From Camelus ferus (Eukaryota): 64,000 bases of DNA. The stretch is from NCBI RefSeq assembly GCF_009834535.1, contig NC_045702.1:19096001-19160000 (forward strand), given 5' to 3'. The translations under genes were made by a program, and so were the position numbers. Below the pieces are notes generated by a model that worked only from the letters and a program-made list of their open reading frames with translations, searched no databases and was not told where the DNA came from. Below are positions 7,427 through 63,326 of this stretch, one piece after another (position 1 is the first letter of the stretch; each line of letters opens with the position of its first letter).

Positions 7427-7703
7427 CTATTTTAAAGTGAACAATTCTTCACTCCTTTCTAAAGATGCGTATGATTTCATGGGATTTTCTTGCCTCCCAG
7501 GCAGACAGACCAAGCTGTCAGCCACTTCCTTCTGGACCGGCCAGCTCCAGGCCTCAGAGAAAGGAACTAGTTTCTTTGCACCTTTTCAGAGAACTTCTTC
7601 ACTGACAGATTCATCTTGCCAGGCTTGTCTTTGGGGATGTCAGACAGGGTCTTTACTCAGCAAAGAGCCGGATGAAGGGCTCCCACCCAAAGGCCTCCAG
7701 GAG
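7427..7703 (-). pseudogene. Third TCAF paralog, exon 8 remnant
   Basis: ttcccag|CTC CTG GAG GCC TTT GGG TGG GAG...; two 1-nt deletions; about 88% identical to TCAF2 exon 8 by hand alignment. Confidence 0.9.
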
Positions 7704-8599
7704 CTGGGAAGAATGAGGTGTCTAGTCTATAGAAGCCACTCCCCCTCCACATACATGTAAAATTACACGCTATCCTTCGTTATAAGCCACCTTTAACACT
7801 GGTTTAATTCTCACCAGTGGCTCTGTCCTTCTGCATTCTCGAATATGTTCACTCTGGTGACTGGTGTCATGTCTCATTCTGCCTCCCTCCATTTTCAGAG
7901 ATTCAGTCTGTGCTTGTGTATCACCTGGTCCGTGATAGGTTCTCAGTAGATGGTAGTTACTTTTAGAATTATTATTTCGCTCACTCCTAAGCTTAGTGGT
8001 AAAGATTTTAGTCTGATTTTGGTGAGGGTACTGTCTCATCTTGTGTAGCTGAGAAGTGGAACCCTTCCATTTGAAAACACACATACCACCCTGACGTAAT
8101 GAGATTTTTATTCTTTGTCGAAGACTTGACTCTTGGTAAGTCTGCCATGTTGCCTTACGGAGACGGACAGTTAGGTAAGGAGAATGCATTCTTTGTGGAT
8201 AGAGCTAGGATGGACTCAGATAATAAGAGAGAGAGGTGCTCAGGGACAGTTCCTGGCAGGCCCCTGACTTAGTTAGTCAGGACTGTAAACTTTAGAGCTG
8301 GAAGGGACACAGTGGCCCATCATTTAGGAACCTATGACCCTGGAGAAGCACTGCCTCGAAGACAAGCTAGTGTCTCAACCATCGCTACTGTCATCCTTTC
8401 ATTGTTGCTCAGCTGCAACCACAGACTGAGCCATTAGGAGATATCTGATACTCATTGTGATCAACTTATTAAATACGTTTAATTATATTTTAATCAGTTA
8501 AGTTAAATTAACAAATAAGTGGCAATGTGGTGTCACTCGAATACAAACGAACATGGGGGAGCAAGCAGATAGTATCTCAAAGGAACATACTCAAGGAAG

Positions 8600-9100: not shown

Positions 9101-9279
9101 CAGTGAAGGGACTCTGCCCCCAGGGGCTTTGCATTAAACTTGTAGATCCAGCTTCTGGCTGGCACTGTGACTGTTTCATGCTGATGCTCAAACAGATTAC
9201 TTATTACTGAGGAATCTCAGAGTGTTTGGAATTGTGGACATCCAGAGACAGTGTGCTGTGGTGCCAAAAGCACGGGGAA

Positions 9280-9440: not shown

Positions 9441-10004
9441 ATGGGAAGATGGAAGGGAAGGTTTTTGAAAAACATTGCACACGTATTATTTATTTTATAA
9501 TGAAACCAAGACTCATCCACATTTGGAGCTTGAGTAAGAAGATACCATTTTGAGAAGTTTGCTACCAGGTCACCTTCCCCAGCGTATGTCCTTACAATGC
9601 ATCGTTAAGTGAGGCGACGTTCTTGTGTTCTGGGCTATGAAGATAACTCAGGAGGAGCCATTCTGGTTTACATTTGGCAGAGCTGGGAGTCCCCCTCAAG
9701 GTCTTCTGGCCGGAGTCTTGTTGTCTTGGTGCACTTTTCACAATGACTCTACTCACTTTTATTTATTTCTACAAAGGTCTGAGGTGGGAGAGAGGAGTGG
9801 GAAACATGTTACCCATTTTAGACGTGTACAGCCTGAGCCACAGAGGGACACTACCATGCAGCCACCTCCCGTGTCCAGAGGAAGCGGTGCGCCTGTGACA
9901 GGGCGAGGGGTGATGTAGGAGCTGTAAGGGTCTTGAGGCTCCACCAGAATGGTGCACGGCTGTGGGGTCTTTGGTCCCCGTCTCCCTCCGTTTCTGCTCT
10001 GTAC

Positions 10005-10341
10005 CTGAAGATAGGCTTCCAGAGCCATCCAATGGTTCCAGTCACTCAGGGGGGCTCCCGGGTCCATGTGCATTTTGACCCTCCACTCTCGACTTTGAGG
10101 ACTCAGAGGAGAGGGGCCTGTGCCCTTGGGGTGTCCAGGACTGTCTCACTCACACAGACTGATCAGAGGTTGCACATGGCCTCGCTGGTATGGGGATGGA
10201 TAATCCATCCAGAGTGCCACAGGTTGGGGCCCATCTCACGGGAGAGACCTCAGATGCCTTTGGACCTTATGATCTTCTCATTAAAGAATACAGGCACCGA
10301 CTGCACATGGCACATGATGGGGTATCCATAATACATCCAAC
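10005..10341 (-). pseudogene. Third TCAF paralog, exon 7 remnant
   Basis: cag|GT TGG ATG TAT TAT GGA TAC CCC ATC ATG TGC...CTT CAG|gtacag; 337 nt vs 338; two TGG->TGA stops; one 1-nt deletion; the Zn motif reads REMGP. Confidence 0.9.
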
Positions 10342-11474
10342 CTGAAGGAAGCAATAAGGAAGAAGAAATGAAGTGATGTGTGATGTCCTTATAGATTGTA
10401 TTTCCTCTGTCGTCCCAGGAGACCCAGAACATTTTAAGTAGTCCCAGGTTAATCAGAAAAGCATCTGACTTTACCTTCCTGTCCAAGCTTATGTGCAGCC
10501 TAACTGGTCTTTTTCCCAGTTTCTCTAAGTTTTACATTTTCATCCCTACTTGATCCTGAAAAGTATATGTACACAGAATATAACTATTAGCATTATCATA
10601 CTCTTTTTCTGTTTTGCAAGGGTGACTGTTCCTATGCATGACAAGAGAAGCTATGCTATAAGCAGTGCCATGGAATACTATTCATCTGTGCCAAAAAACG
10701 AGGTGGATTCACATACACAGGGGAATTAGGCAAATGAGGAAAAACACTGACTTACCTTCTTGGGATTCAAGTCAAATTCATTTGCTCCAATCTAATGGTT
10801 ACGAGAGACCCCATCATTTGTCCAAGTTCTCTCTAATCTTTGCAAACAGAAGGGACCCTGCTCCACGGTGGAAGGAGATGTCAGGGGACCGCCCGTTGCT
10901 TCATAGCCATCAGCTCTTCCATCAGCTCAGAGATAACCCTCCCCGAGTTGTTCCAGAACACTCCTGGGCAGAGAAGCCCCCGAGTGTAAGGATTAGCCTG
11001 ACATGTTCTCCCTGCCATCCCTGGAACACACTGACTCTCAATTTCATTCATTCGTCAGTGTTTATTTGGTGTCTGCTGTATGCCAGCTGGTGCACTACAC
11101 GATGCTAGTGATACCAGGGTGCTAGCGGTAGACAGTAAGCAGAACAGACGTGATTCTTGTCTCTATAACCCTTGTAGATGTTCTCTCCGCTTACCAGCAC
11201 TCTCTAACTATTCAAAATTTGGAGACACGATAGTAAATAAAACAAAACAAAAAATCCTGCCCTCGAGGTGTATAATGCTCAGTCCATAGGAGAGAACAAA
11301 GAAGATATTGTCCTTTATTTGTCAGGGGCCATTGTTATAACTACATTAGTAATTTGTAGTGATTCCATTTCATACTGACAGGTTTCTCCTCTGCTAGACT
11401 GGAAGAGCCTTAAAAATAGGGAACAGACCGCTATTTAACGTAGATCCTGTTCCCCACAGGGACACGTTACTCAC

Positions 11475-12109
11475 CCGACGTGGAGAGGGTCCTTGGGCAC
11501 CTTCTTAGAAACCTTGAGTTGGCCTCTGTCCCCAAAGATGTCCATGAAGTACACTCCGACCACACTGGTCACCTGGTTCCCTGGGACCTTGGACAGCACC
11601 TTGTCACTGCTGTGCTGACTGGCCCAGTACAAGGCCTGGCCCCCGATGAGCAAGCCCCCTCCACGTTTCACAAACTGGATCAGCTCTGCAGTCATGGTGT
11701 CATCGTAGGCATCGATGCAGTAAACCCCCAGGGGTTCTCCCGGTTCTGGCTGAACCTGGGCCTCAACCCCAGAGCCCTGCAGGATGCTGGGCTAGTGATG
11801 CCAGGGATGGGTGCACTCCAACGGGAGCCCCACGTGAGGGACAGAGCCAGCCCACTGCATTGAGAAGAAATGGGGCCAAGCCAGCCTCCAGCAGGTAGCC
11901 CTCGTGGGACACAACCACAAGGCGGCCTTGACCATAGGAGGAGGCGGCAATGAGGACCTGGCCCTGGTCATTCACCATGACTGGGAAGGCGGCCTCTCCA
12001 GTCAGAAGGAGTTCACTGGGGATGGGGTCTTTGGGGACATCCCAGCTTGTCACTCCAGACATGAGGGCCTCAAAGGCAGCAGCGGGAGTTGTCGCCATGG
12101 TTCAATCAG
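11475..12109 (-). pseudogene. Third TCAF paralog, exon 2 (frameshifted)
   Basis: Near-copy of TCAF2 exon 2 with intact acceptor, ATG (12098) and donor GG|gtgagt; extra G at 11789-11791 (624 vs 623 nt) gives a premature stop at 11763. Confidence 0.9.
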
Positions 12110-15100
12110 CTGCAGCAGAAGAGAGCAAAGACTCCAGTATAGGGAATGAATGAACAAAAAATAAATGGATAGTACCAGCTGTGCAAGTGTTAACAGTGAA
12201 AAAGATGAGTAAAAGTTTAGTAATTTCAGTATTATTATGAAAAATAAATAAATGGAGAAAGGCAACAGTTGCCTGCTCTCCCATGGTGACCTGCCCCACA
12301 GTAACTGCAGCCAGGCTCACGTCGTGTGTGTGGCTGCCTCTCCATTGGTTCCCCAGGCTCTAGAACTCTTCATACAGATGATTTCTAAGGGGCCTCTCCC
12401 TCTTGATTTATTTTCATTACTCAGACGTTACCTACAGGAAGACATTGTCTGTCCCTTCCTCCCGTTCCCCAACCTAGGTTTTCTTCCTGGCTCTGTCCTC
12501 TGCCAGCTCAGCTGTCCTCTCTTCTAGCGTCATTTTGCCCATTTCCAGTTATCCTTCATTTGTGGCTGCTACAAATGATACCCATAGTTTATCCATATCC
12601 TGAACTTCTCCAGTGAACATAAATTCTTCATTTTAATCAGCATATGGAGCACTTGCACTAATCCTGCTCCAACTTTGTATGTAGAAAATTGAACTCATTT
12701 CTGTCCTTCTCAACTAGTTACTCTTCGATCCAATACTTCAGCTCACCTTTCTCATTTGCGTAAGGAAGATCATACCAGCCTTGAGGATTTTGAAGTGAGG
12801 GATCGATAGCATTATTACATGGCGAGTCTTTGCTAAGAGCCTGGCAAGTTACACCATCAAAAGCAAATTCCTGTGCTTTCAGCACTTTTTTTGGTTTCTC
12901 CAAATGATAGGAAACAGCACAGCCTTCGAATCATGATCAGCCTTTTCCTCTCTCCTCTTTGAACGTCCAAGTTGATCATCAAGCTTTGTCAAGAATCTGT
13001 CTCTTTCATTCCTGTCGCCACTAACCTGCTTCAGGTTCTTAGTACTTCGTGCTTGGACTGACCTGACCTGGAATCCTCAGTTCTCATAAATCCCCCTCAG
13101 AGCTGCACCACAGGTAAACCACGAGTGCCTCTTTCAGCCTGGGAGTGGAGGTCTTGGGGTCCCCCCCATCATGGTCTTTCAGCTTTATCTTCTGCCATTT
13201 CCAGAGCAGAGACTCTGTCCACTTGGGAAATGTGAACATGGCCTGTGATGCTAGCCTCTTTGTTCTGTAGGACGCCATTTCCTCCTTCCCTCCCCTTCTC
13301 TTTTGCCAACATTCATTACAAGAATTTTAAATGACTCGAAGAAGGCTGGTGAAAAGTTTCTGTATTTATTCTGAGAATAGAACCTTTTTATAGAAGGCCC
13401 TGGCGAGGTGGGTGAAGACTCATGAAACATGGTTTCGGTGCATTTTGCAGCTTGGATGTGAGCAGCAGGCATTTGGTTGAGAGGCATGGTCTGCTGACTT
13501 CTCAGCCCGACAAAACACTACCTTCCCCCCTGGCTTTTTCCAATCACCGAGGCTGGTGAAGAGGGGGAGAAATTGTTTATCATTTTGAGAAGCCAGGAGG
13601 CTTGGCATAATATTTCCATTTTAGCACTAGCCCAGACTCTGTGGGCTATTGCAGGTGACTGGTTTTCAAAGTTAAAGATCTGGTCTCCTCTTTGCAAATT
13701 TAAGGAAAGGCAGGAGTTTTCTGTAGGATCATTGAGTCCCTGCAACCAAAAAGTTAGCTAACATCCTGCCCAGTAGGTGTGTCCTTCGATCCATCATCAG
13801 TGTGGTGGCAGAGGCATATGCAAAGGTCTTTTTATTTGGATGAAGCAATCAGTTGCTTTGCTTAATGAATCCTGGGAGAGTACTTTTCAGCCTCAGAAAA
13901 AAATATTTCAGAGACAATAGTTAAATGTTTAGAGAAAGATAAAAATTAATCTCCTGCTTTGCTTGAGAAGAAGCTGAGGAGGTAAGCTTGGTTGGAGAAA
14001 GTCTTGGAAAAAGAGATAGGTGTATGATATAAGAGCCATTGTGGTTTCATCAGAGGCTTTAGAGATAGTTGACATCTGATTCCCTTTCATCTCAGAAAAT
14101 CAGGATCCATGAAGAGAGAAAGAAACGTGCTAGATCACCAGTCTGATGACAGGTCCCGGGTGGGCATGGGGACAGCCACGCGGGGGCAGACGTCCTCCAC
14201 TCAGTACACTAGCCTGAACACCTGTGACTGGGGCAGTGGAGCTGCAGGTAGAGGAACAGCACATATTCCTGTTCAGAAGTAACTTATGATGTGGCTGCCT
14301 TAAAGCCAAGAAAAAGTTTTCATTACAAAACCAAAAAATGAAATTTTCTACATATAGCCCCTGGATATTTTCTGAAAGTTTAAACTTCCCAGTGGGTGGG
14401 GAGGGAAGGACTTGAGAGCCTTTAGGAGAGGGTGTGGAGGTGGAAGCAGTGAGAATGACATAGGAGATGAACTGACGCTGAGAAGGTGAAGGCGTTCTGT
14501 GGGCCCCGTGGGGATGGGTGACTGTAGCCAGACTCTGTAAAGTGTCCCCAGGGAGGTGGGAGTCTAAGGGGTGAGGGAGGAAGAATTTGGGTGCTATGTC
14601 TAGAGAAAGTGGACTCAGTCTCTGTAAAGATGTCCTACCTTAATTAAGTAGCAGAACCACTGCTGAGACCATGGAGAGTGGGCATCTCGGCTGTAGCCAT
14701 TGTGGACCAGGGACCAGAGGGAGACTTCCTGAACGTTTTTTGCTTAAGTACTGAGCTGAGATTGAAAATTCCCCAGTGCTTAACAGACAATGAATTTCCT
14801 ACTAATCCAAGAGGACGTAGGCTCAGAGTCAAGTCTAATTTGATTGAAAGAAGATACAGTATCTGACATTTCTCCTTTCGCGATTGTAAAGGTCATGAGA
14901 ACAAGAACAGATTGTGACCTGCCACCACGTGTGTGACACTCTGAACCCGATAAGGAACGCTACACCCACGACACTGACTGGATGGTAGCTCTCCCCTCAC
15001 ACATTCCATATGTAATTGGAAACCACACCATATACTGAACTGTAAAAGAAGAGCAAACAAAATTCTGATTTTTTTTTTTTGGTGAAAACTTCAATTTTTT

Positions 15101-18630: not shown

Positions 18631-18762
18631 ATTTAACATCCCTAAGTGACTGTTTTCTCATTTGTGAAATGGAGTAACTCAGAGGTTTGTCGTGAAGATT
18701 CCACGAGGTAACTCATAGGAAGTACCTCACACAATCCTTGGGGCATAAAGACTGCTCATTAA
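18631..18762 (+). mobile_element. MIR 3' fragment overlapping the TCAF2 C-terminal codons
   Basis: atttaacatccctaag...tttctcatttgtgaaatgg...ggtttgtcgtgaagatt...ctcacacaatccttggggcata...gctcattaa aligns to the MIR core and 3' end. Confidence 0.65.
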
Positions 18763-18991
18763 GCATGGGGTTTTCCTCCCACCCAGGCAGACAGGCCAGG
18801 CTGTCAGCCACTTCCTTCTGGACCGGCCAGCCCCAGGCCTCAAAGAAAGGAGCCAGATTCTTCTGCACCTTTTCAGAGAACTTCTGCACCCACAGGTTCA
18901 TCTTGCCAGGGTTGTCTTCAGGGATGTCAGACAGGGTCTGGTACTCAGCAAAGAGCTCGGTGAACGGCTCCCACCCAAAGGCCTCCTGGAG
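18713..18991 (-). CDS. TCAF2: TCAF2 exon 8, terminal coding part (279 nt including TGA)
   Basis: ttcccag|CTC CAG GAG GCC; [17 protein letters not shown]...[22 protein letters not shown]; exon sum 623+992+98+214+240+338+279=2784 nt = 927 aa + stop. Confidence 0.92.
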
Positions 18992-21551
18992 CTGGGAAGA
19001 CAAGGGAGGGCAGGGTGAGGCCCGGGGGTTAGTGGAAGTCCTGTGCAGCACGCATGCCCACGAGTGCACTTCCCTCCCGGTGCTTCTTCCCCTCAGTCAT
19101 CCACTAGCTTCATTCACTTCTTCACTCGCCCCTGTCTCCCCTCTTACTCCTGCACATAAATACAACCCTGCTGGCTCGTTCCACCCCCTGGCCACGAAGC
19201 CTGTACCCCAGGATCTAGTAGGGGACTTCATGAGGATCCTACTGTCCGAAAAGAGGTAGATGCTCAATAAATGAGAGCTGTCACCATTATCTGAGAAAGA
19301 CTTATATCCCCAGTTCCTTCGTGTTCTCCCAGGCACCAGACAGGTTTGTGCCTGACTGAGATGGGGACTGGGACCCCAAAGCTGGAAACTTCCAACAATT
19401 TTCAGACATAATAAAATCCTTTTTTTTTTTTCTTTTTTAGCCACCTCAGACCTGTGACTGTTCTCTTCTTCGTGGAACACTGCCTTTGGGATGAAACAAG
19501 GAAGAAGCAGGTATGTCACAAGGGGCTCAGCGTGGGAGTGGATCAGACTTTATAGGGAACAACTCACCTGAAAGCCATGGACAGGAGGCCCTTGTTAGCT
19601 AAGAATACAGAGATTTAGAATTAGCGGGGATCTTGGGGTTTCCAAGACCTCACTCCCCCTTTGATGGAGGAGAATCCTCTGACTCTGGGGTGTAAAAGCC
19701 TGAGGACAGATGACACTTGGATCAGCGCCCTCTGCTCGCACTGCCTTGGCCTTCGACGGTCCTCCTGCTCATCACCGTTAGTTTAATACATCGACAGATG
19801 TGGCACTTACTACACAAGTAACATTTATTAAATATCTGCAATGTGCCAGCTGTAGTGCTAGGCAAGAGCTCTTATCCTTCTGGAGGTCCCTGGCCAGCGG
19901 GACAGACAGACAGATGTGTAAGTAAAGAAATTACAAAAAAAGTTGGCTTGTCAAGGAGATGGCGTCAGGAGAAGAGGACGATAGAGCTGAATTGTGACAG
20001 GTGACTTGACAGGTGAGAGACAAGATGTTCAAGCACGTTTCAGCTGCAGGAGGGAAGCATGGAGCAGCCGAAACAGTGAGACGTGTTCCCAGTGGGGAGC
20101 AGGCGGGTAAACTGGAGGGTAACTGTGGAGGTGGGAGACTGGGAGTTGGGAGGGAGGTACTGGTGAACGTCTGATAATGAGGGGCCTTGTGCGCCCAGCC
20201 GAGCAGCTTCTGCTGTATCCTGTGTGCAAGGGAGAGCACGTGACGAGGTTTAAACGTGAACCTGCAGGCTGTTTTGGCGGTGGCAGTGGGAGGCGGGCTG
20301 CAGGGCGCCAAAGCAAGATGCCAGAACAGCCGGAGGAATGATGGGGAGTAGACCCCCCGCAGGTGGGGAAAGCCAAAGGTGTCTGTCTGTCCTCAGACCA
20401 AGCCTCAGATTCCAAGATGAGGGGGGTCTCTGCATAGCTTTTGCAAAATGATATCCAGGGCTCCCTGGTGAGTCGGCCAGTGGGTAGAGTGGAATTAGGG
20501 CTTTGTCTTGCACTTCAGTGCCGACTACCACGAGTGTCTGCTTCCCTGCAGACCCTCAGACTGGTTCTAGAAGAACCCTGAGCTGATGCAGTGCAAAGTG
20601 ATCTCATTGACTGGGGCTGTCTCACACTCACTCTTCAGAAAAACGAGTGAAAGAAAAAGAATCAAAGCGGGGGTTATGGAAGTGCAAAAGTCTGGGCTTG
20701 TCACGAACTCCTGATTTCAGGTTCTGGGGCCATCATTTACATGTGTGACACTGGGCAGGATGCCCGCGGTCTTTAACTCGATACTGTGCCTATGAAAAGC
20801 GGGCCGTGCCCACTAGAGGGTCATGGCACACAATGTAGGGGACCTGATGTGGGGAGCGGCTTTGATGACTTGAAAGTATTAAAATTCAAAGCAGGATGGG
20901 CGAGGGGACAGGGATTTACGCTCATTTCACAGGCAGTCAACTTGCTTCAGGACCTTGGTGCTCTCCCGAGTTGGTTATTTATTTACTCATTTCAGAAACA
21001 TTTTGGGTTCAGGTGGGTGATGGAATTCTGAGAATCTTGTTACCAGATTTATTTCCTACGAGGCTGTCTTAGTAATGCAGTTGCCCGTAACACGTCACTG
21101 TAAGTAACTAAGAAAGAATGCAATACTTACTGGACCCGTGAAATTAAGGAGAGGGAAAACAAAGCAAAACAGAGCAATTACCGTTGCTGAAACACTTTGG
21201 AGGGGACAAAGGACAAAAGCAGTGCGTGCGAGAGCTGTGGCTCAGTCTCGGGGAGTCTTACTCAGCAATTCCGCCCTTAATCAAGAAATCCGGGGCTGTG
21301 TTTCTCTCTACTTACTTTCTTTCATAACACTTTGCACTTCCTCTTACTTGTCATTGTGAAATCATAGGAGGTGAGAGGCACAGGAGTCACTGTCTCCATC
21401 TCAGAAACGTGTAACCAGAGCAGCACCGCCGTGCAGCCAGGGGAGCTGGTGGGCCCAGGCTAGCAGGGGTGGTTGGATCGAAGCTTCTACCTGACAGAAA
21501 GTTCTGGCCACCCCCACCCCACCCCAGTCTCCCTGAATTTCTGCTCAGTAC

Positions 21552-21889
21552 CTGTAGATACAGTTCCAGAGCCGTCCACAACTCCCAGTCATTCAGGGGG
21601 GCTCCCTTTCCCAGATGTGTTTTGATCCTCTTCTCTCGTTCTGGAGGGCTCAGATCAGGGTGGGCCTGATCCCTGGGGATGCCCAGGACCGTCTCGTGCA
21701 CGTAGACTGACCACAGGTTGCAGGTGGCCTCGGAGGTGTGCGGGGGGAACTCCCACTGCCAACGCTGCTGGTTGTGGCCCAGCTCGTGGATGGGTCCCCA
21801 CAGACCTCTGCTTCTCACGCCTGTCTCATTGATGAGCTCCTGCACCGACTCCAGGTGGCACATGATGGGGTACCCTGCGTGCATCCAGC
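21552..21889 (-). CDS. TCAF2: TCAF2 exon 7 (338 nt), M60-like peptidase core with intact HELGH motif
   Basis: cccag|GC TGG ATG CAC...CTA CAG|gtactg; [57 protein letters not shown]...LELYLQ. Confidence 0.96.
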
Positions 21890-22085
21890 CTGGGGACACA
21901 GGACAAAGAGTGAGGAGGGGGCGGGGGCACCTGCCCAAACCCATCTCCCTTCGTTCCTCTCCACTGTGTACATTTCCCTCTCCATCCTGGCTGTCCCCAG
22001 TAATTCCAGAATCTCCATGCTGATTGGAAAGCAGATGCTCTCTCTGACTTGGTAGAGACTGAAGAGACCCTACCCTCTTCCCAGC

Positions 22086-22240
22086 CTCTCACTCTGGCCC
22101 TGGATAGTCCTGTCAGTCTGGCCCTGGAGAGTACCGTCACTCTGGCCTTGGATAGTCCTGTCAGTCTGTCCCTGGACAGTCCTGTCACTCTGGCCCTGGA
22201 CAGTCCTGTCACTCTGGCCCTGGACAGTACTGTTACTCTC
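22086..22240. repeat. 24-bp minisatellite, about 6.4 copies, in TCAF2 intron 6
   Basis: Unit ctgtcactctggccctggacagtc with few variants. Confidence 0.92.
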
Positions 22241-22789
22241 TCTATAACTCAGTGCTTCATTTTATGTGATGTTCCCTTGTATGTGAGTTTGCGATGTAAG
22301 GTATTGTGTCTAAATTTGAGATCCTTGAGGCTAGAACATTGCCATTCCTTCTCCCACATAAACCACTGTTGTCCAGGTTCATTCTCTTTCATATCAATAA
22401 TCTTGTCTTTTTTTAAAAGATAAGAAACCAGGTCCAGAGAAATTTTCTGCACGTTGGAACCAGACGTCCTTATTTTTTTTAGCTGCCATTCTTTCCGCTA
22501 AGCCAGTCAGTACTTCACATAAGCCTCTTTACTCTCTTGTTTCGTTGCCAACTCTGACTTATGTTTGAAGGAGGTTCTTCTGTTTTAACTTCTCCTTGAA
22601 ACACCGTCACTGTTCCCTTGAGCTCCTGGTACTGATTTTTCTGTGACTGTTCTGCCATCCTGTGAAATCTCACCTTGTAGATGAACATGATTTACCTTTT
22701 CACATGTAAACATCTTTTTATTCCCATCAAGGTCCATGTCTTGAATGTCTTTTTTCTCTTTACTGGTAAAATTATGTCTTACACATATT

Positions 22790-23392
22790 GGACATTAGAA
22801 AAAGGCAAAATAAAATTCAGCAGAAGGAAGGAAATAATAAAGATCACAGAGGAAATAAATAAAACAGAGATAAAAGCAATAGAAAAGATCAATAAAACTG
22901 AGAGCTGGTTTTTTGAAAGGATAAACAAAATCCTTAAGCCAGGCTAACAAGAAGAAAAGAGAGAGGACTCAAATAAGCAAAATAAGAAATGGAAGAGGAG
23001 AAATAACTGATTCTACAGAATACAAAATCGTAAGAAAATACTATGAAGTTATATGCCAACAAACTGGATAACCTAGAAGAAATGGACAAGTTTCTAGACA
23101 CATACAGCTTGGCCAAACTGAGTCAAGAAGAAACATAATTTGTACAGACCAATCACTAGAAGTGAAATAGAATGTTTAATTAAAAAGACTCCCTACAAAC
23201 CAAAGCCCAGGACCAGATGGCTTCACTGGGGAATTCTACCAAACATACGAATAACTGACCCCTAACCTTCTCAAACTATTCCAAAAGACTGAAGAGGATG
23301 GAACATTCCCAAAGTCATTATATGAAGCCACCATCACCCTGATACCAAAACCAGATAAAGGCACTAAAAAAAAGAAAATCACGCCCCCCCCC
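22790..23392 (+). mobile_element. L1 ORF2 fragment in TCAF2 intron 6
   Basis: Degenerate translation KFSRRKEIIKITEEINKTEIKAIEKINKTESWFFERINK and gaaatggacaagttcctag-like and ccaggaccagatggcttcactgg motifs of L1 ORF2. Confidence 0.9.
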
Positions 23393-23454
23393 CAAAGGCA
23401 AAATGATAAATAAATGGTGTCCATAGACTAGGAGCCTCCCCCCGGGGTACCCAC

Positions 23455-23694
23455 CGGCTGAGAGCTGCACGTCAGCAACAATCCTCTCTGGACAGAGGAA
23501 AGGGAAGGGCTGGGCTGCCAGCCTGGCTATGGCCTGCATCATCTCATCCCAGAGGCGGAGCAAGGGCTCGGGGTCGTCCAGGCCCCTGAGGTCTGCAGTT
23601 GGCAGTGTCAAGATGATGTTGTCTGTTGCCAGCTCCCCCCAGGGAGCCGGGCTCTCCTGGATACAGTTCCTCCACTTCTCCAGGGACGTCTTAC
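23455..23694 (-). CDS. TCAF2: TCAF2 exon 6 (240 nt)
   Basis: cccag|GT AAG ACG TCC...TCA GCC G|gtgggt; [31 protein letters not shown]...ADVQLSA. Confidence 0.95.
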
Positions 23695-24033
23695 CTGGGA
23701 ATAAATACCATGGATCCTGTCACCCACTTCCTCAGGTTCCCTTGAGCTGAAAAACACCACCTGAACTCCCGGAGGAGGACACTGAAATAATGAGCGATCA
23801 TCACGTGGGGCTGCATGCTGCGAACTGAAGGACAGGCCTCTAGACCCTTCCGCCTGTTCTGCCCTGAAGTCTCTGTGGACACAGAGTGTACCTCACCTCC
23901 TGCCTCCACTTCCACCTTGAACAGTTCTTCCTCCTCCTGGCCACCAATCCTCTCCCTCCCCTTCGTAGCAGCAGCCCACAGCTACTGCGGCGTCCCCAGA
24001 TCTCCCGCCTCCCTCCACGTTCAGTCCACTCAC

Positions 24034-24247
24034 CCAGCTTGTAATACGGGGCAGGCACAGCTCTTCTGATGGTGACAGACACAGGGCCCAGTGTACTGCC
24101 CTTGGGCACGATGACATAGAGAAGACCACCCCAGAGGCAGGCGACTGTCCGTGTGGTCCTATCCATGCTGCACTGGTAAGTCACCACGGGGGCTCGAGAC
24201 AGCTTGCTGGCGCTCGTCAAGTCATCGGTGTGGCAGCCAACCTGTAC
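24034..24247 (-). CDS. TCAF2: TCAF2 exon 5 (214 nt)
   Basis: ccag|GTA CAG GTT GGC...AAG CTG G|gtgagt; [22 protein letters not shown]...YYKL. Confidence 0.95.
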
Positions 24248-25236
24248 CTGGAGAGGGGATTCCACCACGTGTGAGAGGAGCTGGGTCTCTGTGCTGTGGG
24301 TGTGGGGTTGTGTGTGGTGCGATGTGGAGGGCACGTATGAGAAAAACTCCGGCTTCCCCTTCCTGTGAGCTGTGCATGCAAGTCTATGAGATTTTAGCAC
24401 TCCAAAAGGCATACGGACCGCAAGGTATGGAGAACCATTTTTCTGGGGATTTAAACAGCTCCACAGTGGACCATCATTGGGCGGACCAGGCATAACCCTG
24501 AGGCTGATATTGACCAGGGTCCCCGGTGCCTCTGCAGCAGGCGCCAGGGCCCAAGCCCATGTCGTTATTCTGATGCTGGGAGTGAGGCCTAGGGGCTCCT
24601 CATCCCCACTCTGTGTACAGAAAGGAGGCCCGTCCAGAGGCACTGGGGTCTGGGCTGAGCCAGGGAGGACTGGCTCTCTCCTCCCTCTCGGTCCCGGCCT
24701 CCCCTCCTGCTCAGATGGATTGAGTGTTGTTTGGTCTGGAGCCCTGGGGCTGCTTTTCGTAGGTTTAATGTAGGTGAGCTCAAGAAAGGAGACTGACACA
24801 GAAGAAACCCCAACTTGTGGTGGGAAGTGACCCCCCCAGAACGGAGGCAGGAAGAATTTAATTCTGCATGACGGCCTATTTTTGTGAGTGATGGGATTAA
24901 GTATACCCTTCAGGTGTCAAGGTAAAGGGGTTTTAAGACTCAGGAAGGCTGAGCTGGGAAATGAGTGAGACTCTGCACATGTGACAGGTGCTTTCTCCTC
25001 ACGTCTCTGTCAGGAGGTGGAACTCTGAGGGCTTGTGTCTGGGCCTGGATCTGATGTTAGGAGCTCTGGCATCTTCAGCCACTGGCCTGGGCTCCCTGTG
25101 ACTTAGCCGTTCCATCTGTGAAATCTGTGACACGGGCAGAACGATGCCCGGCACTCTTGGGAGCACGGCTGCGAGCTGGATGAGAATGCAGCAGCTCTGT
25201 GGCTCTGAGATGTGGCAGAGGGGGTTCTGGTCTTAC

Positions 25237-25606: not shown

Positions 25607-26598
25607 CTGGGTTGCTTCCATCGATCTCCACCGTGATGGGGTGATCTGAGATGGACAGACTGGGGCTGCAGGACCAGACCCCAAGCTCCTGCGCCAGCTG
25701 GGAGCAGTCATTGCCGGAGTGCGCCAGCTCTGTGGCCAGGTAGAGCACTGCCGCCTCGCAGGTGTCACTGGCAACTGGGTTTTCCCGGCTCACAGCTGGG
25801 AGGCCCGACAGGCGCAGAGTCTTCCGCAGGAGCCGGTGCAAGGACGCATAAGCAGGGACCCCCTTGGCCGGAATCTGGAGGAAAGCTGCACCATCGACTC
25901 CCAGTCTGGCTAGCCAGCTCTTTTCCAAGTTCCCACCCCCATGATTCAGGACAGCCTGGAATTCAGAGAGCGCCTTGCGGAAGTGGTAGCTCTGCTTCTC
26001 CGGGGAAGGGACAGGGAAGCAGCCTGGGTTCACTGTCTGAGCTAGGATACTGAGGCCAAAGCAGTTGAGGATGACGTTACCAGGGAAGCCAGCCAGAGCG
26101 GAGCTGCCTGGGTTCTCGGAGGCCCACCACCAGGCCTGGCCCCCGATCAGCAAGCCCCCACCCTCGGCCACAAACTCCTGCAGCTGCGTAGCCTCCTCGT
26201 CACTGTAAGCCACACAGCAGTAGACACACAGGTCTCCCGTCAGATGGGGCTCCAGACTGCATTCCAGGCCATGCTCTGATAGCAGGGCACACAGGTTTTC
26301 CAGACTTGTGTTCACCCCAACTTTGCCCGTCTGGCCTCTGGCCAGCCAGTGCACAGCATTGAGCAAAAAGGGCTCCATCTTGGGAGCACAGAGCATGCCT
26401 TCGTGGGCAGCTAAGACCACCCGGCCCCGGCCATAGCGGGCAGCTGCCAGGAAGCAGCCGAGCGAGGCATCTAAGCCCAGGGGGAAGGCCAGGGCCCCGT
26501 GCACCAGCAGCTGCGAGGGGATCACTCCCGTCTGGATGTCCAGCTCTGTGATCCCTTCCAGGAGCTGCTGCTGATCCTGCCGGGGATCCTCCCCACAC
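25607..26598 (-). CDS. TCAF2: TCAF2 exon 3 (992 nt)
   Basis: tgcag|G TGT GGG GAG GAT...AAC CCA G|gtaggg; open frame CGEDPRQDQQQLLEGITELDIQTGVIPSQLLVHG...ITVEIDGSNP. Confidence 0.95.
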
Positions 26599-41060: not shown

Positions 41061-41683
41061 CTGACCTGGAGAGGGATCTTGGGCACCTTCTTAGAGACCT
41101 TGAACTGGCCATTGTCCCCACAGGTGTCAGTGAAGTACACTCCGGCCACACTGGTCACCTGGTTCCCTGGGAACTTGGACAGCACCTTGTCACTGCCGTG
41201 CTCATTGGCCCAGCACCAGGCCTGGCCCCCGATGAGCAAGCCCCCTCCACATTTCACAAACTGGATCAGCTCTGCAGTCATGGTGTCATCGTAGGCATCG
41301 ATGCAGTAAACCCCCAGGGGTTCTCCCGGTTCTGGCTGAACCTGGGCCTCAACCCCAGAGCCCTGCAGGATGCTGGCTAGTGATGCCAGGGATGGGTGCA
41401 CTCCAACGGGAGCCCCACGTGAGGGACAGAGCCAGCCCACTGCATTGAGAAGAAATGGGGCCAAGCCAGCCTCCAGTAGGTAGCCCTCGTGGGACACAAC
41501 CACAAGGCGGCCTTGACCATAGGAGGAGGCGGCAATGAGGACCTGGCCCTGGTCATTCACCATGACTGGGAAGGCGGCCTCTCCAGTCAGAAGGAGTTCA
41601 CTGGGGATGGGGTCTTTGGGGACATCCCAGCTTGTCACTCCAGACATGAGGGCCTCAAAGGCAGCAGCCGGAGTTGTCGCCAT
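41061..41683 (-). CDS. TCAF2: TCAF2 exon 2, first coding exon (623 coding nt; exon begins at 41694)
   Basis: ctgcag|CTGATTGAACCATGG; [24 protein letters not shown]...KVPKIPLQV; donor GTC AG|gtgagt. Confidence 0.95.
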
Positions 41684-43179
41684 GGTTCAATCAGCTGCAG
41701 CAGAAGAGAGCAAAGACTCAGTTTGGTCAGAAAAAACGAACGAGTGAAAATTCAAACAACTAAATGCATTCATATGAAAACCACTTGCCAGGTTCCCCAA
41801 AATATGCCAAGCCCTGGGGGTGTGGCAAGGAACACAACAAAGTCCCTGCTTTCATGAATCTGATACTTGAGGTGGAGAGGGACAGTAAATAACTCGTTAG
41901 ATAAACAGATAAAATGCAGCAATTAATAATTGTTAGATAAAAATAAAACAGGGATGTGATATCGAGCAACTGGAAAATTACTTTCGATTGGGTGGCAGGA
42001 GAGGCCTACATGAGAAAGTGACATTGAAGCTGAAACCTGACATTTAAGTCATACATACATGACATAAAGGCCCTTCCCTGCTGGCTTCCCCTCTTTCCAG
42101 GATTTGTCCTCCCCACGTCCTCACTGCAGTGCTGGGCTCACTGCTCAAATCAGCTACCTGCACTCAGGTCCATCTGTCAGGCTTTGCTTTGGGGAACGGT
42201 GTCAACAGACAAACACCAAACCCTTCTGCTCTGTCTGTCTCATCCTTCCTCCCTCCTGTGTCCTACACCGTCAGCCGCCTCATTTAGTTCATCTTCTTTC
42301 ACCAGTCTCTCCACTATTGGTCCCTGTGGTTTCATATGGTTTCTGTCCCCAGGATGTATTCTTATCTACAGCCATCTTCAAGCCATCCGACTCACATGTC
42401 TTCCTAATCAGAACCCTCCAGATTCATCTCTCCCCTGAGGGAAAAACAGTGCCTCCCCCAGAATTTAAGCCTCCAGGGTCTGTGCTCTCCAGATTTTTAG
42501 ACTTTTTTCCTTTCCCTTTCTCCTCCAAATCTTTAGTAGGCTTGGCTCTCTGAGCACTCCCTGTATTTCCAGGAAAATTCTAGCTTCTTTTTTTCTCTTT
42601 TAACTTCCTTCCCAAGTACTACCTCTTTCTTAATATTGTCTCCAGGAAAGTGAATTCACAAAAGAGCACCAGTCCCCAGCTGGAGAATGGAGCCAGTGCG
42701 TGCCTGACCTCAGCTTTCGGGAAAAGGCAGCGGGAGGTGAGGAAGCCTGAGGTTGAGTTAACTGCCTCTGACAAGCCAAGAGAGGTCTTTCAGGAATTTG
42801 AGCCTCCCTAGTTTTACAAGAAAAATAACTAAAAAACCCCAGAAAAAAATATGTTCTCAGTACTCTGACCCCAACTCTCTATAGCTGCGTGCACGCGCGC
42901 ACGCACCCACCCCCACACAAGCACCCTCCACGCCATCACACATCATTTATCAAATTCCTGACCCACAAATTCAAAGAGGTGACAGAAAAGTGTTTTGAGA
43001 AAAGTAGCAAAGAGCGAAAGAATGGTGAAACGAAATAAAAACATGAGCCTAAGAAGAGACAGACACCCCGATTGCCGCGAACGTTCTCAGGCCTGCGTCT
43101 GGCACCTCGGGGCGCACCACCGTATCCAGGTGCTGGCCCCCGCCCCTCCCCGCGGGCCTGCTCGGACCGGCGAACTTAC

Positions 43180-58328: not shown

Positions 58329-58579
58329 ATCTGTGTGAGGAGGTACAATTTCATAATATTTTCCTTCCATTCGGGCAGATATGCCAGGCTGGTTGCCACT
58401 TCCTTCTGGATCGGCCAGGCCCAGGCCTCAAAGAACGGAGCCAGATTCTTCTGCACTTGGTGGGAGAACATCTTCACCCACAGGTTCATTTTGTCGACGT
58501 TGTCTGTGGGCAGGTTGGTCTGGTTCCTATACTCAGTGAAGAGACGGATGAACGGCTCCCACCCAAAGGCCTCCTGGAG
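58329..58579 (-). CDS. TCAF1: TCAF1 exon 8 (251 nt)
   Basis: cag|CTC CAG GAG GCC...ACA CAG AT|gtaagg; [17 protein letters not shown]...[12 protein letters not shown]. Confidence 0.93.
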
Positions 58580-60036
58580 CTGGAGAGAGAAGGAAGAAGC
58601 AGGATGAGCCATCTGGGCTACAGAAAGGAGACCTGACCAACACTCTGAATGGACTCGTGTATCTCACCCGTTAAACACCAGCTTCACACCCATCACCAAC
58701 CCTCTCCTGTTTGACCTGCTGGCCTTGCATGCTGCTGTCATGGTCTGAGGATGAGAAGGGCCTCTGAGCGAGCACGGCGCTCAGCACAAAGCAGACAATG
58801 GATAACTGCAGTGAATATTGTCAGGATTTACCACCACTTACTCATCTGTCTCACTAGATCATAAAAGTAGTGGTAGGATATGACACAAGGATTTAAAACT
58901 GGTTGAAGTGAAAAAATCCATTGTCTTTCATAGTTGCAAAGGTAAACTCCCACCCCTATTCTGCCATAATCTGCACTAATCATAGGTCCATGTCAATTTG
59001 CAAGGCGACTAAAATGGCTTTTGGGGAAAAAAGTGAGTTCAGTAGAAGCAGAAGACAATACACAGCCCAGGTAGCAAGAATTAAGAGTAAGGCGTCATTT
59101 TGGGAAAAGGCAGCCATCCTGAGGCTGGTGGAAAGAGGCCGTGTTAGGCTGGGTTAGGACACTTGGGAGCTCAGAGGGACATTAGCACTTCCATACTCAG
59201 CTGGGTTTCACAGATGAGGAACTCCTGTCCCTGGGGTGAAGTGGCCCCAATGACACAGTTAAAGCAGAGTCTCCTGGCAGCTTCACTGTCAGTTTCGTGG
59301 TGGAGGGAATCGACAGAGAGAAGTTGAGCAGCTGGGAGGACCAGAATAGTGTGTGCCGGGCCTGAGCCTGAGGTCCAGAGTCCAAGGTGATGCAACTCCC
59401 CATAGTGAGCTGGGAACTGATCCAGGGACTGGGGGGCCGGAACTGGGGTGTTGAATGATAACTCCAAGGCAAAGGCCACCCCCATGTTCAGGCCAGTGAG
59501 GAATCCTGGCTTGCTACTAAGGTGGAAACTGAGGCACAGGCAAGTCGTAAGGAGAAGATGGTATTTATCTAGGGGAAAAAATAGCTTCTATCCCACATAT
59601 TGTGTGTGTGTGTGGGTGGGTGGGTGCGTGAGGAGGGGGTGTGTTGAGTTTGAGAGAGCTATTTAAGTAGCACAGTTTGGCTTCAGTCTCAGGTGTGTCT
59701 GGGTTTAAAGCCAGTGATAGTAAGTTTATTTATAGTATTACATTTGCCTCTTAACATTTTTTAACCTTTTCTCAGTGCTTTCTATCTACTCTCATAATCT
59801 CTTAAAAATTCTGGGGTGAATGGTGGGGCTGAGATAATTAAGTCCACTTCAGGGTCATACAAAGTGACTCCCTGAGTGGCATCGGCAACCAGGACCCACA
59901 CACCTGGGCCGCGTCAGGGCCTCCCTCGGCCTGGTGTGGGAAGCAGATTAGTGTGAGGGCCCCTGGGCAGTCGCAAAACCATATGCTCAGGGTCCCCACA
60001 GTGGGGCTCCCACCACCCCCCATGCTGGCCCAGCAC

Positions 60037-60374
60037 CTGCAAGTACGTTTCCAGGGCCGTCCACGCATTCCAGTTTTTCACATTGGGACCCTTGCCCAGG
60101 TAGATTCTGACTCTCTTCTCCCGAACTGGGGGCCACAGAGCGATGTTGGCTCGTCCGCGAGGGATGCCCAGGACCGTCTCGTGCACGTAGACACACCACA
60201 GGTTGCAGGTGGCCTCGGTGGTGTGTGGAGGGAACTCCCACTCCTGCCGCTGCTGGTTGCGGCCCAGCTCGTGCACAGGGCCCCAGAGACCCTTGGTTCT
60301 GATGAGTTTCTCATTGATGAGCTCCTGCACCGACTCCAGGTGGCACATGATGGGGTACCCCGCGTGCATCCAGC
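60037..60374 (-). CDS. TCAF1: TCAF1 exon 7 (338 nt), M60-like peptidase core with degenerate HELGR motif
   Basis: cag|GC TGG ATG CAC...TTG CAG|gtgctg; [41 protein letters not shown]...ALETYLQ. Confidence 0.96.
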
Positions 60375-61454
60375 CTGGGAAAGGCAGGACAGGGAAGAGA
60401 AGGTTAGAATGCTTCCCACCCACCTTACAGAATTCTTCTCTGACTTGCATCTCCCGAAACTCCCCGTCATCCCCAATGACTTCCAGAACTCGGTGATGCT
60501 CAGAAAGGCAACCCAAACCCAGACCCTCCCAGGCTTTCCTCCTTCTCCTCTCATTCTGTAATAATGCCTGCATCCTCACTCTGACTGGCTGTGGGAGGTG
60601 AGGCAGGTATATATCGCCGCTCATGCTACTGTTCAGTTCTTCTGTTTCTAGGAGAGTGCCTTGTCCACCTGAACCTGTCATTACACTCCCTTCTCAGAAT
60701 TAAGAACTTGTTGAAGGCATGTTCCCTTCTCATTATTTAGAAGTGGACTTGCCCACCTGACACTACTCTACACTGATCACCTATGTAAGCCAAGCAAGCT
60801 AGCGTCCAGAGAGATTTCCGTGGTTCTTAAATTTCTATACCTCCCCCTCATTTTTTAGGGCTTTTGACCCACTGGCAAAGATCTTTTTATTCAGTGCCTT
60901 CTCGAAGTTGTTAAATTCCTTCTTCCAGCAACTGTGATCTAGGAAGAGGCCCTCCGCCATTTTTAGCCACCCCTTGAAGTCCCCTGATGGACATCTGTCA
61001 AAGCCCTGCATGTATTTTCTGCACCATCCAGACTGGCTGACAGCATCCCTTGACATGTTGACTTAAATGGTTACATATTTTAACATACTCCATACTTACA
61101 GTTCTAGGATCTGCTTTTTTGGTCACATAATCTCATCATATTTCCTTTAGCCATCAAAATATCACTTTAAATGTCTTCCTTAATGTCCATTGAAGGTACA
61201 CATAATACATTACATAACTGTTCCACAAATGTTGGACATTTAGGTAGTTTCCAATTTTTCTGCTTGGGAAGATGGCCAAGTCTTTTTTTTTTTTTTTTTT
61301 AATGTATTTTTCCCTTTTGATTTAAACAGCAAGGATTACATCTATGTCCTGCTAGAAAAACATTTTTACCCTGGTGGCTGCCCACTGCGTGGATGTTGTA
61401 AAACAGGAAGGCCCCGAGGGGCAGCATGCACAGAGGTTCGCCCCGGGTACCCAC

Positions 61455-61694
61455 CAACTGAGATCTGCACGTCGGCCACGATCCTCTGAGGCAGACGCAG
61501 TGGGAAGGGCTCGGCCCCCAGCCGGGCCACGGCCTGCATCACCTCGTCCCAGAGGCGAAGCAGTGGCTCAGGGTTATCCAGAGTGCGAAGGTTGGCAGTT
61601 GGCACAGTCAAGATGATGTTGTCCGTAGCCAGCTCTCCCCAGGGGCCTGGATTCTCCTGGATACGCCTTTTCCACTCCTCCTGGGATGTTTCCC
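61455..61694 (-). CDS. TCAF1: TCAF1 exon 6 (240 nt)
   Basis: cag|GG GAA ACA TCC...TCA GTT G|gtgggt; [31 protein letters not shown]...ADVQISV. Confidence 0.95.
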
Positions 61695-62007
61695 CTGGAA
61701 GAAAGGCCACAGGGCTTGAAACTCACTTTCTCAAACCCCTTGGACATTAACACGTGCAACTTGAACACCAGGAGGAGAACATCAAGGCCATGAACAGCCC
61801 GACCCCACCTCTGTCCCTCTTCTGCAAAGTTCCCGTGGATGCGAAGCGGTTTGGTCTTCATCTCCTTTGCCCCAAAGCTGAAGCTATGGAAGGCTACCTC
61901 CCGTCCCTCCACCAGTCTGCGTCTCTTCCTACACCAGCAGCCCCAGATGACCACCTCGCCCCCAGCTCTCCCTGTCCCTCGGGGCTGGCTCCGGGGCCTC
62001 CCCTCAC

Positions 62008-62221
62008 CCAGCTTGTAGTAGGGGGCACGCACAGCCCCCTTAACGGTGACGGGCACAGCGCCCAGCTTGCTGCTCTGAGGCACGATGATGTAGAGGAGGC
62101 CGCCCCAGAGGCAGGTGATCGACTTCGTGGGCTTGTCCAGGCAGCAGCGGTTAATCACAAGTGGGCCTCGGAACAGCTTGCTGGCCCTGGTCAGGTCGTC
62201 AGTGTGGCAGCCAATCTGTAC
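62008..62221 (-). CDS. TCAF1: TCAF1 exon 5 (214 nt)
   Basis: cag|GTA CAG ATT GGC...AAG CTG G|gtgagg; [22 protein letters not shown]...YYKL. Confidence 0.95.
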
Positions 62222-63275: not shown

Positions 63276-63326
63276 GGAGCATCTAGGTTCTGTGTTACGT
63301 ACGTAGCGAGATCAGGCATGCCTTAC

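What the first reader, a model, noticed from the sequence alone, without database searches (positions are those of the whole stretch)
11632..12134. Sharp ~500-bp gene-conversion-like tract shared by TCAF2 exon 2 and the pseudogene exon 2
Seen: 11632-12134 matches 41218-41719 with only 3 substitutions (11665, 11892, 12084) and one extra G (11789-11791), about 99%. The adjoining 3' ~160 bp of the same exon has about 20 differences (~88%), and similarity stops abruptly ~25 bp into the upstream intron. The tract covers the acceptor and the ATG. Inference: recent non-allelic gene conversion between loci 29.6 kb apart, one of them dead. This could also carry the frameshift into functional TCAF2. Known: the human TCAF1/TCAF2 region is a duplication and structural-variation hotspot, so this would be an independent lineage showing similar instability.
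Basis: partly seen in the sequence, partly recalled or inferred. Interest (0 to 1): 0.75.

Follow-up and report, generated by a model that had tools for sequence, protein, structure and literature searches.

The report
Old gene-conversion patch in camel TCAF2
The first coding exon of camel TCAF2 and the same exon of a decayed neighbouring copy share a real, near-identical tract of about 510 bases made by gene conversion, but the patch is also present in alpaca, so it is older than about 16 million years and is an ordinary kind of event.

Summary
On the minus strand, 11632-12134 and 41218-41719 differ by 3 substitutions and 1 base of length. The next 181 bp differ at 25 sites (Fisher p = 9e-12). 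All homology stops about 25 bp outside the exon on both sides.

The 41-kb exon is the intact first coding exon of TCAF2 and splices in frame to 26598. The 11.7-kb exon belongs to a truncated, decayed paralog (A) 6.6 kb downstream. The frameshift is in A.

- **Not an artefact:** the same mosaic is in six assemblies of four camelid species.
- **Not local constraint:** camel-whale TCAF2 divergence is even along the exon (8.4% and 8.8%).
- **Trees:** the 3' part separates by paralog. In the 5' tract the two copies intermix.
- **Not recent:** alpaca has the same boundary, which I place at 11620-11626. The patch therefore predates the Camelini/Lamini split (~16.3 Ma).
- **Direction:** three derived states of A (11833 P89R, 11755 I115V, 11627) are also in Camelus TCAF2 but not in alpaca TCAF2. 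This points to a later transfer from the pseudogene into the working gene.

This is a known kind of event, interlocus gene conversion. No earlier report of this case was found in the scan or in the held literature.

The parts
11620..12134 (-). High-identity conversion tract in the decayed paralog A. It covers 25 bp of intron, the acceptor, the ATG at 12098-12096 and codons 1 to about 157.
   Evidence: It has 4 differences in 503 columns against TCAF2. The edge is set by a shared-derived site at 11636 and by the first paralog-specific sites shared by camel and alpaca at 11619 and 11617.
11451..11619 (-). Older stratum of A exon 2: codons about 160-208, the donor (last exon base 11475) and 24 bp of intron.
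   Evidence: It differs from TCAF2 at 13.8-14.9% of sites in every camelid. The A clade has 100% bootstrap, and camelid A plus TCAF2 group against Kogia at 93%. 15 of 17 differing codons are non-synonymous, including W156L.
11789..11791 (-). Homopolymer run with one extra base, the frameshift of A exon 2.
   Evidence: The extra base is in the A copies of C. ferus (both assemblies) and C. dromedarius. It is absent from A of C. bactrianus and alpaca and from every TCAF2 copy.
41206..41719 (-). The matching tract in the functional TCAF2 first coding exon.
41061..41683 (-). Coding part of TCAF2 exon 2 (208 codons open, donor GTGAGT follows).
   Evidence: There is an open frame at 41057-41683. It is 100% identical to residues 1-208 of Camelus TCAF2 protein P0268. 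It joins in frame to 26598.
25607..26598 (-). TCAF2 exon 3, the second TCAF_N-like domain. It is 41% identical to exon 2 at protein level and is an internal repeat, not a rival exon 2.
   Evidence: Full-length TCAF proteins match the exon-2 query in two stretches.
18716..24251 (-). Remaining TCAF2 coding exons (M60-like_N, Peptidase_M60, C-terminus).
   Evidence: Pfam hits and tblastn of camelid TCAF2 proteins.
9975..10344 (-). Decayed Peptidase_M60 exon of paralog A, with in-frame stops and a frameshift.
   Evidence: It is 70% identical to TCAF2 and sits on a branch of 0.38 substitutions per site inside the TCAF2 clade.
7460..7712 (-). Decayed last exon of paralog A, read in three frames. It is 87-89% identical to the TCAF2 last exon and may be another old patch.
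58348..64000 (-). 3' part of TCAF1, which runs off the window.
   Evidence: Its M60 exon is 95-97% identical to primate and rodent TCAF1 proteins.

Best explanation
The tract is the product of interlocus (non-allelic) gene conversion between the first coding exon of TCAF2 and the same exon of an old, truncated, decayed TCAF2-like paralog (A) lying 6.6 kb downstream of TCAF2.

A shares no intron homology with TCAF2. Exchange is therefore confined to exons and stops about 25 bp outside them.

The exon carries two layers:
- An older patch covered the whole 684-bp block in the camelid stem lineage. It is now about 14% diverged.
- A later patch re-homogenised the 5' part (about 515 bp) shortly before Old World and New World camelids split. 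This created the sharp edge at 11620-11626 that both lineages still show.

In the Camelus stem a further exchange ran from A into TCAF2. It gave Camelus TCAF2 the A-lineage states R89, V115 and the synonymous C at 11627. It ended at the same edge because identity drops there.

The 1-bp insertion in A arose afterwards.

What is shown: the mosaic, its presence in four species, its boundary and the contrast between the partitions. What is inferred: the number, order and direction of events.
For: - **Mosaic and its significance:**
- **Same mosaic in six assemblies:** L001 alpaca, L002 and L006 C. ferus, L003 and L004 C. dromedarius, L005 C. bactrianus. The 5' tract has 4-8 differences in 503 in good Camelus assemblies and 13 in 502 in alpaca. 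The 3' part has 23-27 in 181 in all of them, at the same sites.
- **Even orthologous divergence:** camel against Kogia is 8.4% in the 5' tract and 8.8% in the 3' part. The low 5' divergence between paralogs is therefore not constraint or a cold spot.
- **Partition trees and AU tests:**
- **Homology limited to exons:** TCAF2 introns align between camel, Kogia and Puma for more than 1.5 kb on each side. A aligns to any TCAF2 only in exon +-25 bp, even with word size 7.
- **A is dead elsewhere:**. An almost intact exon 2 in A is what patching predicts.
- **Older layer:** 5 sites in the 3' part are shared by camelid A and TCAF2 against Kogia = Puma, with bootstrap 93%.
- **Direction in Camelus:** at 11833, 11755 and 11627 the derived state is in A of both genera (at 11833 alpaca A has CAT, one CpG step from CGT) and in Camelus TCAF2. 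Alpaca TCAF2, Kogia, Puma and peccary keep P89, I115 and T.
Against: - In the 5' tract no topology is rejected (AU p = 0.14-0.74). The number and timing of events within the tract rests on a handful of sites.
- One Lamini assembly only.
- 11665 (C145R) conflicts with a simple A-to-TCAF2 story unless a CpG site mutated twice.
- 12105 cannot be polarised, because Kogia has C and Puma has T.
- No reads were examined.
- The origin of A outside camelids was not established. No A-like exon lies within 10 kb downstream of TCAF2 in Kogia or Puma.
Confidence: 0.85

Rival explanations
1. There was a single conversion event at about the time of the Camelini/Lamini split and no later exchange. The three sites shared by A and Camelus TCAF2 reflect sorting of two ancestral TCAF2 haplotypes, or parallel mutation.
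For: The AU test does not reject paralog monophyly in the 5' tract (p = 0.29). Alpaca A-versus-TCAF2 divergence (2.6%) is about equal to the orthologous camel-alpaca divergence (1.6-2.8%).
Against: It needs two TCAF2 haplotypes differing at 3 sites in 207 bp in one ancestral population, or three coincident hits at the same sites. My rough estimate, not a computed test, is p < 1e-3 for two identical parallel changes among about 4 substitutions. Camelus A-versus-TCAF2 divergence (0.6-1.6%) is below the orthologous divergence.
Confidence: 0.25
2. The near-identity was created when reads of one copy were used to build or correct the other (assembly collapse or mis-polishing).
For: Short near-identical paralogous segments are a known source of such errors. 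The extra base sits in a homopolymer.
Against: The same mosaic, with the same boundary, is present in six assemblies of four species made with different technologies. Each copy carries its own private variants. At about 86% identity, reads of the 3' part map uniquely.
Confidence: 0.02
3. The 5' part of the exon is simply much more conserved or mutates more slowly than the 3' part, so two old copies stayed alike there.
For: The tract holds the start codon and the core of the TCAF_N domain.
Against: Orthologous TCAF2 divergence is the same in both parts: camel-Kogia 8.4% and 8.8%, camel-Puma 12.9% and 12.7%. A is a pseudogene with stops and frameshifts elsewhere. The tract includes 25 bp of intron.
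Confidence: 0.02
4. A is a young partial duplicate of TCAF2. The 5' tract shows its true age, and the 3' part was later overwritten from a third, more distant copy.
For: The human TCAF locus is known for young segmental duplications (PMC8387397).
Against: There is no intron homology between A and TCAF2 at all. A's M60 exon lies on a branch of 0.38 substitutions per site. Most 3' differences are changes private to the A lineage, with outgroups agreeing with TCAF2 at 16 of 25 sites. No third donor was found in the loci.
Confidence: 0.03

Closest known systems
Interlocus gene conversion among human TCAF paralogs (Hsieh et al. 2021, PMC8387397)
   Same: It involves the same gene family and the same mechanism class. 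That paper reports candidate interlocus gene conversion sites among TCAF segmental duplicates.
   Different: The human events lie in young (>98% identical) human-specific segmental duplications and affect a putative enhancer. Here the partners are an old decayed paralog and the working gene. They share no intron homology, the tract is limited to an exon, and it is at least 16 million years old.
Pseudogene-templated conversion of a neighbouring functional gene (for example CYP21A1P/CYP21A2, GBAP1/GBA1); from general knowledge, not tested here
   Same: A dead tandem copy acts as donor of short tracts into the live gene. The inferred Camelus event moves A-lineage substitutions (P89R, I115V) into TCAF2.
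   Different: Those human cases are recurrent pathogenic events between copies that are highly identical along introns too. Here the transfer is fixed in a genus, carried no disabling lesion, and the homology is confined to exons.
Rodent Tcaf3 (third TCAF gene next to Tcaf2); from general knowledge and the scan note s1-149398
   Same: It is a third TCAF2-like copy adjacent to TCAF2. A's M60 exon falls inside the TCAF2 clade when rooted on TCAF1.
   Different: Orthology of A with Tcaf3 was not tested. A is truncated and decayed, and no A-like exon was seen within 10 kb downstream of TCAF2 in Kogia or Puma.

Membership tests
Interlocus (non-allelic) gene conversion tract | A segment of much higher identity between paralogs than the flanking homologous sequence, beyond chance | tested here: met
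   0.8% against 13.8% divergence. Fisher p = 8.5e-12, and 0 of 5000 permutations reached the observed maximal chi-square.
Interlocus (non-allelic) gene conversion tract | Phylogenetic discordance: the tract does not cluster by paralog while the flank does | tested here: met
   In the 3' part the A clade has 100% bootstrap and species trees are rejected (AU p < 1e-5). In the 5' tract A and TCAF2 are intermixed with no fixed paralog-specific site. Paralog monophyly is not formally rejected there (p = 0.29).
Interlocus (non-allelic) gene conversion tract | Not explained by local constraint or mutation-rate differences | tested here: met
   Orthologous TCAF2 divergence is equal in both parts.
Interlocus (non-allelic) gene conversion tract | Both copies really exist as assembled | tested here: met
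   Six assemblies of four species show both copies with private variants. Reads themselves were not available.
   The boundary and the 3' paralog-specific sites are shared with alpaca. The split is dated ~16.3 Ma (PMC12337305).
Pseudogene-to-gene conversion (pseudogene as donor) | Derived states of the pseudogene lineage appear in the functional gene of one lineage, while the sister lineage and outgroups keep the ancestral state | tested here: inconclusive
   Three sites (11833, 11755, 11627) fit this pattern. 11665 conflicts unless a CpG site mutated twice. One Lamini genome only.
TCAF family (TRPM8 channel-associated factor) | TCAF_N x2, M60-like_N and Peptidase_M60 domains, with near-identity to annotated camelid TCAF2 | tested here: met
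   Pfam hits. Exons are 99-100% identical to Camelus TCAF2 proteins.

The most novel reading that the evidence does not exclude
In the Camelus stem lineage the dead paralog acted as donor. It wrote at least 207 bp (11833-11627) of its own neutrally evolved sequence into the first coding exon of the working TCAF2 gene. This fixed two amino-acid replacements (P89R, I115V) in a regulator of the cold sensor TRPM8. The same route remains open for the frameshift now present in A of C. ferus and C. dromedarius.
Probability: 0.55. Interest if true: 0.45.

Novelty: new member of a known kind. Interest (0 to 1): 0.3.

Why it matters
It is a clean, multi-species example of exon-limited gene conversion between a working gene and a long-dead neighbour.

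- **Persistent boundary:** a sharp identity boundary can persist for more than 16 million years and be reused by later events. Read in one genome only, it looks recent.
- **Practical for camelid genomics:** the patched exon has already misled annotation. One C. ferus model joins the pseudogene exon to TCAF2, and NCBI- and 301-residue 'genes' on A. It will also confuse short-read mapping and variant calling in TCAF2 exon 2.
- **Possible biology:** if the pseudogene-to-gene direction holds, two Camelus-specific residues in a TRPM8 regulator came from a pseudogene. That can be tested, but nothing here shows a functional effect.

Tried and rejected
- **A rival TCAF2 exon 2 at 26.0-26.6 kb.** The 41% protein match there could have made the 41-kb exon an orphan. 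I rejected this. TCAF proteins carry two tandem TCAF_N-like domains (two matched stretches). The 41-kb exon splices in frame to 26598 and matches residues 1-208 of camelid TCAF2.
- **Intron homology between A and TCAF2.** Sensitive blastn found none.
- **An A-like copy downstream of TCAF2 in Kogia and Puma.** None lies within 10 kb. This does not show absence further away.
- **Loci that could not be fetched.** Hippopotamus and Equus had no record, so ruminant, pig and hippo DNA was not compared. Only their proteins were compared.
- **GC-biased conversion signature.** Among changes shared by all camelid copies, weak-to-strong is 8 and strong-to-weak is 6, so there is no signal.
- **Maximal chi-square breakpoint.** It fell at 11544 rather than at the first difference. 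It marks where differences are densest, not the tract edge.
- **Literature.** No paper in the held library links TCAF2 and camels in this sense.
- **N runs.** The runs at 28799-28935, 29078-29210 and 45692-45841 were left untouched.
Full report
**1. The observation**

Both blocks lie on the minus strand. A global alignment shows that 11632-12134 and 41218-41719 differ at 12084, 11892 and 11665, and by one extra base in the run 11789-11791 of the 11.7-kb copy. That is 4 differences in 503 columns.

The adjoining 11451-11631 has 25 differences in 181 columns. Fisher's exact test gives p = 8.5e-12 for the block and 1.4e-9 for exon bases only. None of 5000 permutations reached the observed maximal chi-square.

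A self-comparison of the window and a more sensitive one show that homology between the two regions is confined to 11451-12134 / 41037-41719. That is the exon plus about 25 bp of intron on each side.

**2. What the two exons are**

The window carries, all on the minus strand:
- the 3' part of TCAF1 (58348 to the window end);
- a complete TCAF2;
- a third copy, A, at 7460-12134.

Pfam finds M60-like_N and Peptidase_M60 in the TCAF2 and TCAF1 exons.

The 41-kb exon has an open 208-codon frame ending at a GTGAGT donor. It joins in frame to the exon starting at 26598. It is 100% identical to residues 1-208 of Camelus TCAF2 (P0268), whose remaining residues map to 26600-18716.

The 41% protein match between this exon and 26010-26570 is the internal repeat of the family. 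Full-length TCAF proteins match the exon-2 query in two stretches.

Copy A keeps only three pieces:
- exon 2;
- a Peptidase_M60 exon with in-frame stops and a frameshift;
- a last exon readable only in three frames.

A lacks exons 3-6. The frameshift in exon 2 is in A, where the frame from 12098 stops at 11763, and not in TCAF2.

An earlier scan note (s1-149398) also reads A as a third decayed paralog. My checks agree that it is decayed. I did not test orthology with rodent Tcaf3.

**3. Not an artefact, not constraint**

The window is identical in both blocks to C. ferus GCA_009834535.1 (L002).

I fetched the TCAF2 locus with 10-kb flanks from six sources:
- alpaca (L001);
- C. ferus, two assemblies (L002, L006);
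- C. dromedarius, two assemblies (L003, L004);
- C. bactrianus (L005).

Every one has both copies in the same arrangement and the same mosaic.
- The 5' tract has 4-8 differences in 503 in the good Camelus assemblies. The old dromedary assembly shows 20, mostly small indels.
- The 5' tract has 13 differences in 502 in alpaca.
- The 3' part has 23-27 differences in 181 in all of them, at the same positions.
- Each copy has private variants.

Assembly collapse is therefore excluded.

Orthologous TCAF2 divergence is even along the exon. Camel against Kogia is 8.4% and 8.8%, and camel against Puma is 12.9% and 12.7%. The low paralog divergence in the 5' tract is therefore not constraint or a mutational cold spot.

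**4. Partition test**

ML trees put the 3' part into two clades by paralog. A has 100% bootstrap and TCAF2 has 81%. Camelid A plus TCAF2 group together against Kogia at 93%.

In the 5' tract the two paralogs are intermixed, and alpaca TCAF2 is sister to all other camelid sequences.

AU tests reject species-wise trees for the 3' part (p < 1e-5). They reject nothing for the 5' tract: paralog monophyly has p = 0.29, species-wise p = 0.14 and Camelus-only p = 0.50.

**5. Age and boundary**

Alpaca shares the boundary. The last site at which all camelid copies share a derived state against Kogia = Puma is 11636. The first sites that separate A from TCAF2 in both genera are 11619 and 11617.

Positions 11631 and 11611 are private to Camelus A, and 11628 is private to Camelus TCAF2. 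The edge is therefore at 11620-11626 and predates the Camelini/Lamini split, given as ~16.3 Ma in PMC12337305.

There is no fixed paralog-specific site in the 5' tract across genera. The homogenising event was therefore not long before the split. The tract is old, not recent.

**6. Layers**

TCAF2 introns align between camel, Kogia and Puma for more than 1.5 kb on each side of exon 2 at 67-84% identity. A aligns to any TCAF2 only within the exon +-25 bp.

A's M60 exon sits on a branch of 0.38 substitutions per site inside the TCAF2 clade, rooted on TCAF1. A's last exon has a branch of 0.087 and groups weakly (57%) with camelid TCAF2.

In the 3' part of exon 2:
- five sites are shared by camelid A and TCAF2 against the outgroups;
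- 16 of 25 differences are changes on the A branch;
- 5 are changes on the camelid TCAF2 branch.

I infer that A is an old paralog whose exons have been patched from TCAF2 at different times. The M60 exon was not patched or was patched very long ago. The last exon and all of exon 2 were patched in the camelid stem. The 5' part of exon 2 was patched again shortly before the split.

Fifteen of 17 differing codons in the 3' part are non-synonymous, including loss of the conserved W156. This fits neutral decay of A between patches.

**7. Direction in Camelus**

Three sites have the same pattern when polarised with Kogia, Puma and, at protein level, peccary:
- 11833 (codon 89): CCT is ancestral, CGT is in Camelus A and Camelus TCAF2, and CAT is in alpaca A.
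- 11755 (codon 115): ATT is ancestral, and GTT is in A of both genera and in Camelus TCAF2.
- 11627 (third base of codon 157): T is ancestral, and C is in A of both genera and in Camelus TCAF2.

Alpaca TCAF2 keeps the ancestral state at all three sites. Alpaca A's CAT is one CpG transition from CGT.

The simplest reading has three steps:
1. These changes arose in A before the split.
2. They were copied into TCAF2 in the Camelus stem, over at least 207 bp.
3. The copying ended at the old edge.

The opposite direction needs three coincident hits. Lineage sorting needs two ancestral TCAF2 haplotypes that differ at 3 sites in 207 bp. I rate the A-to-TCAF2 event at about 0.55.

Site 11665 (C145R, a CpG) conflicts unless it mutated twice. 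Site 12105 is T in both Camelus copies and C in both alpaca copies. It cannot be polarised because Kogia has C and Puma has T.

**8. The frameshift**

The extra base is in A of both C. ferus assemblies and of C. dromedarius. It is absent from A of C. bactrianus and alpaca and from all TCAF2 copies. In C. bactrianus and alpaca the 208-codon frame of A exon 2 is open, and NCBI calls short gene models there.

The distribution does not follow the species tree. It may reflect polymorphism, gene flow among camels (reported in PMC12337305) or a homopolymer error. Nothing shows it has entered TCAF2.

**9. Comparison with what is known**

Interlocus gene conversion is a well-known process. Candidate events among human TCAF duplicates are described in PMC8387397. 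Pseudogene-templated conversion of a live neighbour is also well known from human disease genes (general knowledge). I found no paper on camelid TCAF conversion.

This is a new instance of a known kind. The useful points are the persistence and reuse of the boundary, the exon-limited homology, and the likely pseudogene-to-gene transfer of two residues.

**10. Verdict**

- The gene conversion mechanism is supported (0.85).
- 'Recent' is not supported.
- The pseudogene is at 11.7 kb and TCAF2 exon 2 is at 41 kb.
- Interest is modest (0.3).

Noticed in passing
L006 (C. ferus GCA_000311805.2), protein P0269; window 11474-11779: The 2012 C. ferus gene model EPY80759 (921 aa) uses the post-frameshift 3' part of the pseudogene's exon 2 as its C-terminus. 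Its residues 820-921 match 11779-11474 at 99%. The model therefore fuses TCAF2 with copy A.
   Followed up: partly
L001 39539-42946; L002 39586-40213; L004 39550-40177; L005 39496-40122: Public annotations call short genes (208 or 301 residues, TCAF_N) on copy A. In C. bactrianus and alpaca the 208-codon frame of A exon 2 is open.
   Followed up: partly
window 41251, 41477, 41576, 41669 (TCAF2 exon 2) and the same sites in L002-L006: Camelus TCAF2 exon 2 comes in two haplotypes that do not follow species. The window and C. ferus GCA_009834535.1 match C. dromedarius. C. ferus CB1 matches C. bactrianus, including C145R. This fits the gene flow or incomplete sorting among camels reported in PMC12337305.
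   Followed up: no
A copy equivalents of window 12053, 12041, 12033 in L005 and L006: Three clustered substitutions within 21 bp (G>A, G>C, C>A) are seen only in copy A of C. bactrianus and C. ferus CB1. This could be a micro-conversion from an unseen donor or a multi-nucleotide mutation. No donor was looked for.
   Followed up: no
window 11606 equivalent in L001: Alpaca A and alpaca TCAF2 share a derived C at the 11606 equivalent. The site lies inside the otherwise paralog-specific 3' part. It is either a very short exchange in the alpaca lineage or a parallel change.
   Followed up: no
window 53864-54269: A tandem array of about four copies of a roughly 100-bp unit (82-91% identity between copies) lies in the TCAF1-TCAF2 intergenic region.
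   Followed up: no
window 7460-7712 vs 18746-19000: The last exon of A is 87-89% identical to the last exon of TCAF2, while the M60 exon is only 70% identical. Homology stops about 30 bp before the TCAF2 stop codon. That is the stretch another scan note (s1-149719) attributes to an antisense MIR.
   Followed up: partly
window 28799-28935, 29078-29210, 45692-45841: Three runs of N, two of them inside the 14.5-kb TCAF2 intron between exon 2 and exon 3.
   Followed up: no
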